A DNA stretch of 64,000 nucleotides from Octopus sinensis. Lineage: Eukaryota. The stretch is taken from contig NC_042999.1 of NCBI RefSeq assembly GCF_006345805.1, positions 37,200,001-37,264,000 of the forward strand, written 5' to 3'. Every line of letters begins with the position of its first letter. Within the stretch, counting starts at the first letter, position 1. Shown here piece after piece: positions 32,766 through 34,143 of this stretch. A program made the translations under genes and the position numbers. The notes under the pieces were generated by a model. It ran no database searches. It was not told the origin of the DNA and saw only the letters and a program-made list of their open reading frames with translations.

Positions 32766-33336
32766 GTAAGTAGTTCGATTTTCTATGCTTTTATAACTAT
32801 AAATATTGACCCTTCCCCTATTTCCTTCATTCCACTTGCATGATAACAGTCACGAAACCCACCAAACGACAAGCGTTGTCGTTATTGTCCCAACAGTACG
32901 GCCATCAACGTCGCCACCATCAACAACCGACACCTTCATCGCCACTATTCTCAGTGCATATTTACTGTCAAACCTTATCTTCTTGCATGCAAACGCGTCT
33001 CTGTGAATGTGCATGCATGACAGTAGATGACATTTGTTTTTTCTCTGAATTTTTGAGATGACGTTGTCATTATTATAACATTGATACAAGGCGCCGGACA
33101 AAATGTTTAGCAGCAGTATTTCTTCCGACTCCTTACGTTCTGAGTTCAACTTCTGCCGAAGCCGACTTTACTTTTCATCCTTTCGGGTTCGATAAAATAA
33201 GTACTTGCTGAACAGAGATGGTCATTGTAATCGACTTGGCCCTTTCAGAAGTTAAGGTCTAGCGCTAAAATTTGAAACAATATTATACAATGATATAATG
33301 CGGCATGCTAGCAGAATCGTTAGCACGGCAGAATCG

Positions 33337-33486
33337 TTAGACGGGGGATCACTCGGCTCGTCTGTCGATGAAGAGCGCGGCTATCCGCGTGAACTGATAC
33401 GAATTGCAAGACTCAGTGAACATCGACACCTCGAACGCACATTGCGGCCCCGGGATCCCATCGTCCCGGGGCCCCGTCCGGTCGAG
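33337..33486 (+). pseudogene. Isolated, near full-length 5.8S rRNA retrocopy
   Basis: GGATCACTCGGCTCG..GTCGATGAAGAGCGC..GAATTGCA..CATCGACAC.TCGAACGCAC.TTGCGGCCCCGGG matches the metazoan 5.8S consensus. The 10-bp GC stem 33446-33455/33464-33473 is perfect. No ITS, 18S or 28S flanks; an A-rich tract follows. Confidence 0.9.
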
Positions 33487-33504
33487 ATTTAAAAAGAAAA
33501 AAAA

Positions 33505-33918
33505 TGTGGCGAGCTGGCAGAAACATTAGCACGCCGGGCGAAATGCGTAGCCATATTTCGTCTGCCGTTACATTCTGAGTTCAAATGCCGCCGAGGTCGA
33601 CTTTACCTTTCATCCTTTCGGGGTCGATTAAATAAGCACCAGTTACGCACTGGGTCGACATAATCGACTTAATCAGTTTGTCTGTCCTTGTTTGTCCTCT
33701 CTGTGTTTAGCCCCTTGTGGGTAGTAAAGAAATAGGTATTTCGTCTGCCGTTACGTTCTGAGTTCAAATTCCGTCGAGGTCGACTTTGCTTTTCATCCTT
33801 TCGGAGTCGATAAATTAAGTACCAGTTACGCACTGGAGTCGATCTAATCGACTTAATCCCTCTGTTTGTCCTTGTTTGTCCCCTCTATGTTTAGCCCCTT
33901 GTGGGTAGTAAAGAAATA
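33505..33918 (+). mobile_element. SINE C dimer forming the 3' half of the 5.8S chimera
   Basis: One head and two bodies, junction aagaaata|ggta at 33735; followed by the TSD copy at 33919-33933. Confidence 0.9.
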
Positions 33919-34143
33919 AGAATCGTTAGCACGTCGGATGAAATGTTTAGCAGCATTTCTTCCGGCTCTTTACGTTCTTAGATCAGATTCCGCTGAGGTC
34001 AAATTTGCCTTTCATCCTTTGAGATTCAGTAAAATAAGTATCAGTTGAGCACCGAGATCAATGTCATGAACCGTCCCCACCACCTCCCTCTCTTAAAATT
34101 GCTGATCTTGTACCAAAAATTTAACCATTATTACACATTGATA

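What the first reader, a model, noticed from the sequence alone, without database searches (positions are those of the whole stretch)
33313..33933. TSD-flanked retro-chimera of 5.8S rRNA fused to a SINE dimer, in calpain intron 1
The 15-mer agaatcgttagcacg occurs at 33313-33327 and 33919-33933. Removing the block between them restores one old C-variant SINE (about 33297-34130). The inserted block reads: 13 nt copied from the target (gcagaatcgttag), a near full-length 5.8S rRNA with an intact 10-bp stem, an A-rich linker, then a SINE C head plus two bodies. So a Pol I-derived RNA and a SINE RNA appear to have been integrated in one event, like the U6-L1 template-switch chimeras known in mammals (inference). 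If it recurs genome-wide, it would be a 5.8S-headed retroposon family, which I do not know to be described.
Basis: partly seen in the sequence, partly recalled or inferred. Interest (0 to 1): 0.8.

Follow-up and report, generated by a model that had tools for sequence, protein, structure and literature searches.

The report
5.8S rRNA–SINE chimeric retrocopy
A decayed copy of 5.8S ribosomal RNA, an A-rich linker and a complete SINE sit together between one pair of 15-bp target-site duplications inside an older SINE in the first intron of a calpain-like gene; it is most likely a one-off by-product of reverse transcriptase switching templates, a known kind of event with an apparently unreported partner RNA.

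Summary
Rfam finds one full-length 5.8S rRNA match (33333-33491, 106 bits), and it is the only one in the window. The exact 15-mer lies at 33313-33327 and 33919-33933. Joining the flanks gives an old-variant SINE that aligns without a gap to its relatives. The inserted SINE (33503-33918) is a full-length member of a younger family. Its "dimer" form is normal: copies with one to four body units occur across the window.

A single retro-integration event is the best-supported reading. Neither the 5.8S part nor the SINE part has a duplication of its own, although other copies show duplications of 12-22 bp. Two hits at the same hotspot would leave a duplication copy between the parts, and there is none. 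The divergence of the two parts is compatible with one age.

The event is not proven, for three reasons:
- No empty allele or orthologous site could be examined.
- Genome-wide recurrence could not be tested.

The structure departs from U6/L1-type chimeras: the 3' partner is not truncated, and a 15-19 nt A-rich linker separates the parts. This suggests an end-to-end jump onto an oligoadenylated 5.8S RNA. Nothing supports a 5.8S-headed family. Interest is moderate to low.

The parts
33297..33327 (+). 5' fragment (head positions 1-31) of the host, an older-variant SINE. It ends in the left copy of the target-site duplication.
   Evidence: Aligns to the heads of the other SINE copies of the window. 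It carries the old-variant GCTAGC (D4).
33313..33327 (+). Left copy of the 15-bp target-site duplication, AGAATCGTTAGCACG.
   Evidence: Exact match to 33919-33933. It corresponds to SINE-head positions 17-31.
33328..33340 (+). 13-nt filler GCAGAATCGTTAG at the 5' junction. With the following ACG it forms a second, 16/17 copy of the target 17-mer.
   Evidence: Identical to 33311-33323 (D6). TRF reports period 17 and 2.1 copies at 33311-33344. It is also 13/13 to the head of other SINE copies such as c15632 and c46123.
33341..33488 (+). Retrocopy (pseudogene) of mature 5.8S rRNA. Homology is unambiguous from about nucleotide 10 of the rRNA to about 6-8 nt before the usual 3' end.
   Evidence: Rfam RF00002, 33333-33491, 106.4 bits, model 1-154. 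Aligned with 11 environmental 5.8S genes. It differs at 9 of 95 columns invariant in those references. No ITS-like flanks and no other rRNA in the window.
33489..33502 (+). A-rich linker (ttaaaaagaaaaaa). Its limits are uncertain by a few bases on each side; the broadest reading is 33487-33506.
   Evidence: Read directly from the sequence. Other young SINE copies carry only 0-5 extra A/T-rich bases before GGCGGCGAG.
33503..33918 (+). Full-length young-family SINE: head 33503-33553, body unit 1 33554-33736, body unit 2 33737-33918. It ends in the family tail AAAGAAATA.
   Evidence: 26 mismatches in 416 positions (6.2%) and one 1-nt gap against the family consensus built from 11 other copies. 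Units repeat at a spacing of 183-184 nt (D1, D2).
33919..33933 (+). Right copy of the 15-bp target-site duplication.
   Evidence: Exact copy of 33313-33327. It directly abuts the SINE tail.
33934..34130 (+). Remainder of the host older-variant SINE, from head position 32 to the tail CCAAAAATTTAACCATTATTACA.
   Evidence: Joined to 33285-33327 it is colinear with the other SINE copies of the window.
32616..32765 (+). Context: first coding exon of the calpain-like host gene (MNRETHDSYKK...ITWKRPH), with a GT donor at 32766. Intron 1 runs to 44943.
   Evidence: tblastn lead and translation. Exon 2 is 44944-45010. A later exon hits PF00648 proteins.

Best explanation
This is a dead-on-arrival chimeric retrocopy made in one target-primed reverse-transcription event.

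Inferred sequence of steps:
1. A LINE-encoded endonuclease nicked the head of an old SINE at GC|AGAAT. The site fits the SINE RNA tail AAAGAAAUA.
2. The reverse transcriptase copied a complete young-family SINE RNA (head plus two body units) to its 5' end.
3. Instead of finishing, it continued on a second template: a mature, or slightly 3'-trimmed, 5.8S rRNA carrying a short A-rich 3' extension, most simply an oligo(A) tail.
4. It copied that RNA to within about 10 nt of its 5' end.
5. The cDNA end was joined to the upstream target DNA. This probably involved a further jump onto the target's 3' overhang followed by end joining, which left a second, partial copy of the target sequence.
6. A staggered top-strand break 15 bp downstream produced the duplication.

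The element has no function of its own. 5.8S has no internal Pol III promoter (established knowledge), so the composite cannot propagate as a SINE, and it has since decayed.

Shown: the anatomy, the colinear empty site, the single duplication and the RNA-like ends of the 5.8S copy. Inferred: one event, the order of templates, the oligo(A) origin of the linker and the way the junction was resolved.
For: - One full-length 5.8S match, the only one in the window, in sense with the SINE.
- An exact 15-bp repeat bounds the whole block, and the joined flanks restore a colinear old SINE.
- The SINE tail AAAGAAATA abuts the right duplication copy, as expected if priming began on the SINE RNA.
- Other young SINE copies have their own duplications of 12, 12, 15, about 17 and about 22 bp. 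Neither the SINE nor the 5.8S-plus-linker has one here.
- Two successive hits at the same nick site would give T-5.8S-An-T-SINE-T. No T copy lies between the linker and the SINE.
- The 5.8S copy has no ITS-like flanks: target-like sequence lies upstream and an A-rich tract downstream.
- Ages are compatible. The SINE part is 6.2% from its consensus (26/416). The 5.8S part differs at 9/95 invariant columns (Fisher p = 0.26).
- The host SINE is much more diverged (about 70-80% identity to its relatives), as a nested insertion requires.
- Chimeras of cellular RNAs, including rRNAs, with LINE/SINE 3' parts, flanked by short direct repeats, are documented. So are double jumps and jumps onto target DNA (PMC2104539, PMC13174262).
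Against: - No empty allele, orthologue or second copy could be examined, so one event rests on duplication logic alone.
- Classical chimeras have a 5'-truncated 3' partner joined directly to the 5' partner (PMC2104539). Here the SINE is full-length and a 15-19 nt A-rich linker intervenes.
- Against majority (>=9/11) columns of generic 5.8S genes, the copy differs at 20/126. That is significantly more than the SINE part (p = 0.0016) and could mean the 5.8S part is older. However, three of the four changes in paired positions preserve pairing, one pair being changed on both sides, which suggests that part of this difference is lineage-specific.
- The extra 13-16 nt target-like copy needs an additional ad hoc step.
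- The host head and the inserted head share an unusual AATG start (D4), which this model treats as coincidence.
Confidence: 0.55

Rival explanations
1. Composite source transcript (5' transduction). Elsewhere in the genome a SINE copy sat a few bases downstream of a 5.8S sequence, either in an rDNA unit at the start of ITS2 or beside an older 5.8S retropseudogene. One RNA spanning 5.8S, spacer and SINE was reverse-transcribed from the SINE tail and inserted here as a unit, with no template switch.
For: - It gives the same single duplication and the same orientation.
- It would explain the linker as spacer or old A-tail.
- It would explain the 5.8S part looking more diverged than the SINE part on majority columns (20/126 against 26/416).
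- If the source was an rDNA unit, pre-rRNA processing would explain a 5' end near the mature 5.8S end.
Against: - It needs a SINE inserted within about 15-19 nt of a 5.8S 3' end and a transcript starting at the 5.8S 5' end.
- No such locus is in the window.
- The generic ITS2 starts seen in 11 references are not this A-rich.
- It is untestable here.
Confidence: 0.18
2. Two independent retro-insertions. A polyadenylated 5.8S retropseudogene and a SINE landed next to each other at different times, one of them with no duplication or a 1-2 bp duplication, so that only the outer duplication remains visible.
For: - The A-rich tract after the 5.8S looks like the tail of a stand-alone processed pseudogene.
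- A-tails and the AGAA-starting site are attractive targets.
- SINE-in-SINE nesting is common in the window, for example 38862-39332.
- The possible excess divergence of the 5.8S part.
Against: - Every young SINE copy with readable flanks has a 12-22 bp duplication, and none is present for the SINE alone.
- The only shared string is AAAGAAA, which belongs to the SINE's own consensus tail.
- Re-use of the same nick site predicts a duplication copy between the linker and the SINE, which is absent.
Confidence: 0.1
3. A 5.8S-An retropseudogene inserted into the head of the young SINE with a 31-bp duplication (33297-33327 and 33503-33533). On this reading the downstream old SINE is merely a 5'-truncated neighbour and there is no chimera.
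For: The two 31-mers are 81% identical and both begin AATG where the consensus reads AAGG (D4).
Against: - It leaves the young SINE with no duplication of its own...caatgatat upstream against agaatcgtt downstream.
- It needs a chance 15-nt overlap between the left fragment and a truncated old SINE.
- The left fragment carries the old-variant GCTAGC.
- 31 bp exceeds the 12-22 bp seen elsewhere.
- Six differences in 31 nt are many for a duplication of this age.
Confidence: 0.03
4. Artefact or non-retrotransposition origin. Either an assembly join in a SINE-rich region, or capture of rRNA-derived cDNA or DNA during double-strand-break repair.
For: - The region is dense in near-identical SINE copies that can mislead assemblers.
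- No independent reads could be checked.
Against: - The block has clean, biologically coherent boundaries: exact duplication, SINE tail at the duplication, and mature-like 5.8S ends.
- The 5.8S is diverged from functional genes, so it is not a stray rDNA read.
Confidence: 0.05

Closest known systems
Bipartite chimeric retrogenes made by LINE reverse-transcriptase template switching (U6/L1, U3/L1, 5S/L1, 7SL and mRNA chimeras; Buzdin and colleagues, features listed in PMC2104539; catalogue in PMC13174262)
   Same: - The 5' part is a near-complete copy of an abundant nuclear or nucleolar RNA.
- The 3' part is a retroposon ending in its normal tail.
- Both parts lie in the same orientation.
- The whole is flanked by one short direct repeat, 15 bp here.
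   Different: - The 3' partner is a full-length SINE, not a 5'-truncated LINE.
- The parts are separated by a 15-19 nt A-rich linker instead of being joined directly.
- The partner RNA is 5.8S rRNA, which the 2026 catalogue never mentions (0 occurrences).
- The host looks like an octopod genome rather than a mammal or fungus, though the taxon was not established.
Tripartite chimera WEIRD/Mg-SINE/MGL in Magnaporthe grisea (PMC2104539)
   Same: - A SINE takes part in the chimera.
- It is flanked by an identical direct repeat of similar length (14 bp there).
- More than one jump is inferred. Here the 13-nt SINE-head/target-like filler could be a third template.
   Different: - The third segment here is only 13-16 nt and may come from the target DNA.
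- Switching there occurs at specific internal sites, whereas here it occurs at the very 5' end of the SINE RNA.
28S rRNA/L1 and 5S rRNA/L1 chimeric insertions (PMC13174262)
   Same: A ribosomal RNA is co-integrated 5' of a retroelement in one event with target-site duplications.
   Different: Those rRNA parts are recurrent fragments (28S positions 3636-4115; 5S 1-45, often antisense). Here a nearly whole 5.8S lies in sense.
rRNA-derived SINE families (5S-headed SINE3-type, SINE28; reviewed in PMC10946416)
   Same: An rRNA-derived segment at the 5' end of a SINE-like body.
   Different: - Those are multi-copy families, and the 5S-headed ones use the 5S internal Pol III promoter.
- This is one copy in 64 kb.
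- 5.8S has no Pol III promoter (established knowledge).
- The SINE's own promoter lies downstream of the 5.8S part, so it would not transcribe it.
RtcB-ligated U6/L1 chimeric RNA (PMC6789731)
   Same: An alternative way of joining two RNAs before reverse transcription.
   Different: That ligation needs a 2',3'-cyclic phosphate 3' end (established knowledge). An oligoadenylated 5.8S end would carry a 3'-OH, so the linker argues against this route.

Membership tests
Template-switch chimeric retrogenes (criteria of PMC2104539) | The 5' part is a full-length copy of a cellular RNA | tested here: met
   Rfam aligns model positions 1-154 of 154. Homology to reference 5.8S genes is unambiguous from about nt 10 to about 6-8 nt before the usual 3' end. 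The first ~9 nt overlap the target-like filler.
Template-switch chimeric retrogenes (criteria of PMC2104539) | The 3' part is a 5'-truncated copy of a LINE, SINE or mRNA | tested here: not met
   The SINE aligns to the family consensus from position 1 to the tail, 416 aligned positions. The switch would have been at the template's 5' end.
Template-switch chimeric retrogenes (criteria of PMC2104539) | Both parts have the same transcriptional orientation | tested here: met
   The 5.8S copy and the SINE are both on the + strand.
Template-switch chimeric retrogenes (criteria of PMC2104539) | The parts are joined directly | tested here: not met
   An A-rich linker of about 15-19 nt lies at 33487-33506.
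Template-switch chimeric retrogenes (criteria of PMC2104539) | The chimera is flanked by short direct repeats (target-site duplication) | tested here: met
   Exact 15-bp repeat, and the joined flanks are colinear with the host SINE family.
Template-switch chimeric retrogenes (criteria of PMC2104539) | Formed in a single integration event | not testable with these tools
   This needs an empty or orthologous site, or population data. No cephalopod genome could be searched.
Stand-alone processed pseudogene of 5.8S rRNA | RNA-like ends, an A-rich 3' tail, and its own target-site duplication directly after the tail | tested here: not met
   The RNA-like ends and A-rich tract are present. The tract is followed by the SINE 5' end, not by a duplication copy.
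Functional 5.8S rRNA gene (RF00002 in an rDNA unit) | Lies between ITS1 and ITS2 in an 18S-5.8S-28S unit, with conserved core positions intact | tested here: not met
   No other rRNA in the window. The flanks are SINE and A-rich sequence. There are 9 changes at 95 columns invariant in 11 references, against 0-6 for the references themselves. One helix pair is broken.
rRNA-headed SINE family (SINE3 / SINE28-like) | Many dispersed copies sharing the same head-body junction, each with its own flanks | not testable with these tools
   Only one copy in 64 kb. The 20 kb of Octopus sinensis DNA fetched holds no 5.8S match. No genome-wide search was possible.
rRNA-headed SINE family (SINE3 / SINE28-like) | The head supplies an internal Pol III promoter | not tested
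   By established knowledge 5.8S is cut from a Pol I precursor and has no A/B or C box. No promoter test was run here.

The most novel reading that the evidence does not exclude
The 5.8S-linker-SINE junction recurs across the genome or in related octopods. This would mean either that the composite became a propagating 5.8S-headed retroposon lineage, or that the cephalopod LINE reverse transcriptase habitually jumps from SINE RNA onto oligoadenylated nucleolar RNAs, making 5.8S a recurrent chimera partner.
Probability: 0.06. Interest if true: 0.6.

Novelty: new member of a known kind. Interest (0 to 1): 0.33.

Why it matters
If the single-event reading holds, this locus records reverse-transcriptase template switching in a mollusc retroposon system whose SINEs end in AAAGAAATA rather than in a long poly(A).

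It would add 5.8S rRNA to the list of RNAs caught in such chimeras. That list so far holds U1-U6, U3, 5S, 28S, tRNA, 7SK, 7SL, Y RNA and Alu (PMC13174262).

The A-rich linker would point to an oligoadenylated 5.8S RNA, which by established knowledge of nuclear RNA surveillance is likely a form marked for degradation, as the template used.

It is a single, decayed, intronic copy with no sign of function. Its value is as a mechanistic footprint, not as a new genetic system.

Tried and rejected
**Searches that led nowhere**
- Protein-space search for other copies of the junction, using the 55-aa reverse-frame peptide across SINE head, linker and 5.8S: no candidate at all.
- Exact look-ups of two ORFs spanning the junctions: not on record. 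Independent assemblies or reads could therefore not be checked.
- Metagenome scan for the copy's variant helix (GATGAAGAGCGCGGCNNNCCGCGTGAA), meant to recover a true cephalopod 5.8S: 0 hits.
- A second, generic metagenome scan gave 119 eukaryotic rDNA loci. The best are only 82-85% identical, so they serve as generic references only.
- Viral-contig scans for the junction pattern and for the SINE core: 0 hits.
- The RT-like ORF 6980-7573 was searched to fix the taxon. The best hits are 60-73% identical, from shrimp, a sea anemone and Octopus sinensis, which is not decisive.
- The O. sinensis locus L120 holds two old-type SINE copies at about 75% identity and no 5.8S.
- ARAGORN and Rfam at E <= 1 do not recognise the SINE head as a tRNA.

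**Ideas rejected**
- The SINE 'dimer' as a special feature. It is a common family form.
- A duplication of the old SINE inferred from attatacaatgata. That string belongs to the family tail.
- The 'ggttagac' at the 5' end of copy 2791 as a related filler. It is more simply a diverged 5' end.
- The perfect 10-bp stem as evidence of constraint. At about 10% divergence, roughly one copy in eight would keep 20 nt unchanged by chance (my calculation).
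Full report
**What is there**

Rfam finds exactly one RNA family in the 64-kb window. It is a 5.8S rRNA at 33333-33491 on the + strand, scoring 106.4 bits against a gathering score of 42 and covering model positions 1-154 of 154. A permissive re-scan of 33250-34200 adds nothing.

The 15-mer AGAATCGTTAGCACG is exact at 33313-33327 and 33919-33933. The 13-mer GCAGAATCGTTAG at 33328-33340 repeats 33311-33323 exactly. 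Tandem Repeats Finder describes 33311-33344 as 2.1 copies of a 17-nt unit.

The 10-bp stem GGCCCCGGGA/TCCCGGGGCC is perfect at 33446-33455 and 33464-33473. After the 5.8S copy comes atttaaaaagaaaaaaaatg (33487-33506). A SINE follows, with its head at 33503-33553 and two body units at 33554-33736 and 33737-33918. The SINE ends in AAAGAAATA directly against the second 15-mer.

**Is the 15-mer repeat more than chance?**

The 15-mer is not rare. It belongs to the SINE head and occurs 5 times exactly and 19 times with up to 2 mismatches in the window, against 0.06 expected in shuffles. The real argument is geometric:
- The left flank (33297-33327) is a SINE head that stops at head position 31.
- The right flank (33919 onwards) is a SINE that starts at head position 17 and runs to its tail.
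- Joining 33285-33327 to 33934-34150 gives a sequence that aligns to nine other SINE copies with no gap or duplication at the joint.
- The left fragment carries GCTAGC, seen in three of the seven aligned old-variant copies and in none of the 12 young copies.

The host is therefore one old SINE split by an insertion with a 15-bp target-site duplication. It is only about 70-80% identical to its relatives, so it is much older than the insert.

**The SINE part**

Twelve copies of a younger family lie in the window. Their consensus is a 52-nt head plus a body unit of about 184 nt.
- Copies with two, three or four body units are common: 15632-16027, 27946-28351, 62431-62841, 54461-55057 and 14018-14731. 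The 'dimer' is an ordinary family form.
- The inserted copy aligns to head plus two bodies over 416 positions, with 26 mismatches (6.2%) and one 1-nt gap, starting at consensus position 1. It is full-length.
- Readable duplications of other copies are 12 bp (2791), 12 bp (40331), 15 bp (15632), about 17 bp (the nested pair at 38862-39332) and about 22 bp (27946).
- Several duplications start with AGAA or A-rich bases, which could pair with the tail AAAGAAAUA. This would make GC|AGAAT in a SINE head a natural target (inference).

**The 5.8S part**

No cephalopod 5.8S was within reach. I therefore fetched 119 eukaryotic rDNA loci from metagenomes by a conserved 17-mer and aligned the 11 most similar.
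- Homology is unambiguous from CGGGGGATCAC (reference CGGTGGATCAC, about nt 10 of the rRNA) to ...GGTCGAG (reference GTCTGAG), about 6-8 nt before the usual 3' end.
- No ITS1-like or ITS2-like sequence flanks it. This points to an RNA intermediate with mature or slightly trimmed ends, not to a piece of rDNA.
- The first 9 nt of the rRNA (AACTCTAAG or AACTCTTAG in the references) overlap the filler ...AATCGTTAG, with 6 of 9 matching. TTAG or ACG could belong to either side, which is the kind of microhomology seen at retroposon 5' junctions.

The copy differs from the references at 9 of 95 columns invariant in all eleven. The references themselves differ at 0-6 such columns when each is held out. 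It differs at 20 of 126 columns shared by at least nine references.

Against the SINE's 26/416, the first figure is not significantly different (Fisher p = 0.26). The second is (p = 0.0016). Part of the excess is probably lineage-specific:
- A->G at 33379 and T->C at 33386 are the two sides of one helix pair.
- A further change turns a G-U pair into G-C.
- Only one or two pairs are broken.

The ages of the two parts are therefore compatible, but equality is not shown.

**One event or two?**

Call the 15-bp target T. A normal insertion gives L-T-insert-T-R, with the insert's tail against the right T. What is observed is L-T-(T')-5.8S-linker-SINE-T-R.
- If a 5.8S-An pseudogene came first and a SINE later re-used the same nick, the result would be T-5.8S-An-T-SINE-T.
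- If the SINE came first, the result would be the same order.
- No T copy lies between the linker and the SINE.
- A SINE landing exactly at the An|T boundary without a duplication would be an exception to the 12-22 bp seen in every readable copy.
- The only string shared by the SINE's two flanks is AAAGAAA, which is part of the SINE's own consensus tail.

A fourth layout treats 33297-33327 and 33503-33533 (81% identical, both starting AATG) as a 31-bp duplication of a 5.8S insertion into the young SINE. That layout leaves the young SINE without any duplication and needs a chance 15-nt overlap with a truncated old SINE. I give it about 3%.

A single integration of a composite cDNA is the most economical reading.

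**How the composite arose**

Two routes give the same product.
- (a) Template switching. The reverse transcriptase reaches the 5' end of the SINE RNA and continues on the 3' end of a second RNA. The A-rich linker, far longer than the 0-5 extra bases at other copies' 5' ends, fits a 5.8S RNA with a short oligo(A) tail. Such a tail resembles the A-rich end on which this enzyme normally starts.
- (b) A composite transcript from a locus where a SINE already lay just downstream of a 5.8S sequence, for instance in an rDNA unit.

I favour (a) because such chimeras are documented for many abundant nuclear RNAs, including rRNAs (PMC2104539; PMC13174262), and because (b) needs a very particular source locus. 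The species' ITS2 start and a genome-wide junction search would decide.

Ligation by RtcB, shown for U6/L1 (PMC6789731), is less likely. An oligoadenylated end would carry a 3'-OH rather than the cyclic phosphate that enzyme requires (established knowledge).

**The extra target-like copy**

The 13-16 nt at 33328-33343 match the target 13/13, or 16/17 with one deletion. They equally match the head of other SINE copies. Three origins are possible:
- a jump of the cDNA end onto the target's 3' overhang followed by end joining; jumps onto target DNA are proposed as part of normal integration (PMC2104539);
- a short third template from another SINE RNA, making the insert tripartite;
- a 17-bp tandem duplication present before the insertion.

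I cannot tell these apart.

**Context**

The host gene is calpain-like and lies on the + strand.
- Exon 1 is 32616-32765 (MNRETHDSYKK...ITWKRPH, GT donor at 32766).
- Exon 2 is 44944-45010 (EIVEKPVFLREASYYDLNQGEL, phase 1).
- Exon 3 is 48278-48388 (completing ...LGNCWFICGL...).
- Further exons lie at 58203-58370 and 61406-61630.
- The 58.2-kb exon hits only PF00648 proteins.

The insert lies 548 bp into intron 1, in sense with the gene. The taxon was not established. The SINE family has diverged relatives in a fetched Octopus sinensis contig, which is consistent with an octopod.

**Comparison with what is known**

The element works like the bipartite chimeric retrogenes of mammals and fungi.
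- It meets three of their listed features: a near-full-length cellular RNA at the 5' end, the same orientation, and flanking direct repeats.
- It fails two: a truncated 3' partner and direct joining.

It is best described as a relative formed by an end-to-end jump rather than a textbook member.

5.8S rRNA is not among the partners listed in the 2026 catalogue of L1 chimeras (0 occurrences of '5.8S'). It is also absent from the table of rDNA-derived mobile elements in a 2024 review. Three full-text searches turned up no retroposed 5.8S copy or 5.8S-containing chimera. That library is incomplete, so 'unreported' is provisional.

**Verdict**

The structure is real and coherent, and is most likely a one-off chimeric retrocopy (confidence about 0.55). 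Three rivals give the same layout by other routes: a composite transcript (0.18), two insertions (0.10) and an artefact or other origin (0.05-0.08).

There is no evidence for a family or a function. It is a new member of a known kind, of moderate to low interest unless a genome-wide search shows recurrence.

Noticed in passing
window 48278-48388 (exon 3 of the calpain-like gene) with 44944-45010: The catalytic-cysteine motif reads QGELGNCW instead of the usual QGxLGDCW.
   Followed up: partly
window 38862-39332: A young SINE on the + strand (38976-39206) is nested inside another young SINE on the - strand. Host positions 120-136 are duplicated, giving a target-site duplication of about 17 bp. 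This is a clean second example of SINE-in-SINE insertion.
   Followed up: partly
window 62418-62431 (- strand), 3' flank of the SINE at 62431-62841: The 3' flank begins AGAAACGTTAGCG, a 13-mer matching the SINE head, just as at the finding. There is no matching copy at this element's 5' side. The flank continues into a Tc1/mariner-like remnant. It may reflect a target preference for AGAA-starting sites or a lost host SINE.
   Followed up: partly
window 14018-14731, 15632-16027, 27946-28351, 33503-33918, 54461-55057, 62431-62841: Young SINE copies carry one to four body units. The order of the two unit types (GATAAATTAAG and GATTAAATAAG) differs between copies, so arrays seem to have formed more than once. 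This could itself reflect template slippage or switching during reverse transcription.
   Followed up: no
window 33297-33300 and 33503-33506: The host SINE head and the inserted SINE head both begin AATG where both families' consensus reads AAGG. This is either coincidence or a hint of sequence exchange at the junction.
   Followed up: partly
window 33379 and 33386: In the 5.8S copy an A->G and a T->C change fall on the two sides of one helix pair (A-U to G-C). This suggests that the source rRNA of this lineage already differed from the generic metazoan sequence.
   Followed up: partly
window 6980-7573 (+): A 197-aa ORF resembles the C-terminal part of a retroelement protein. It is 60-73% identical to proteins annotated in shrimps (Penaeus), a sea anemone (Exaiptasia; UniRef name 'Reverse transcriptase') and Octopus sinensis, an unusually wide spread for that level of identity.
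   Followed up: partly
window 41290-41583 (-) and 62250-62430 (-): These are remnants of mariner/Tc1-like transposase reading frames, judged by eye and not searched against a family library.
   Followed up: no
window 33092-33289: Another old-variant SINE, 5'-truncated, lies directly upstream of the host SINE. The two form a head-to-tail pair separated by about 8 nt.
   Followed up: no
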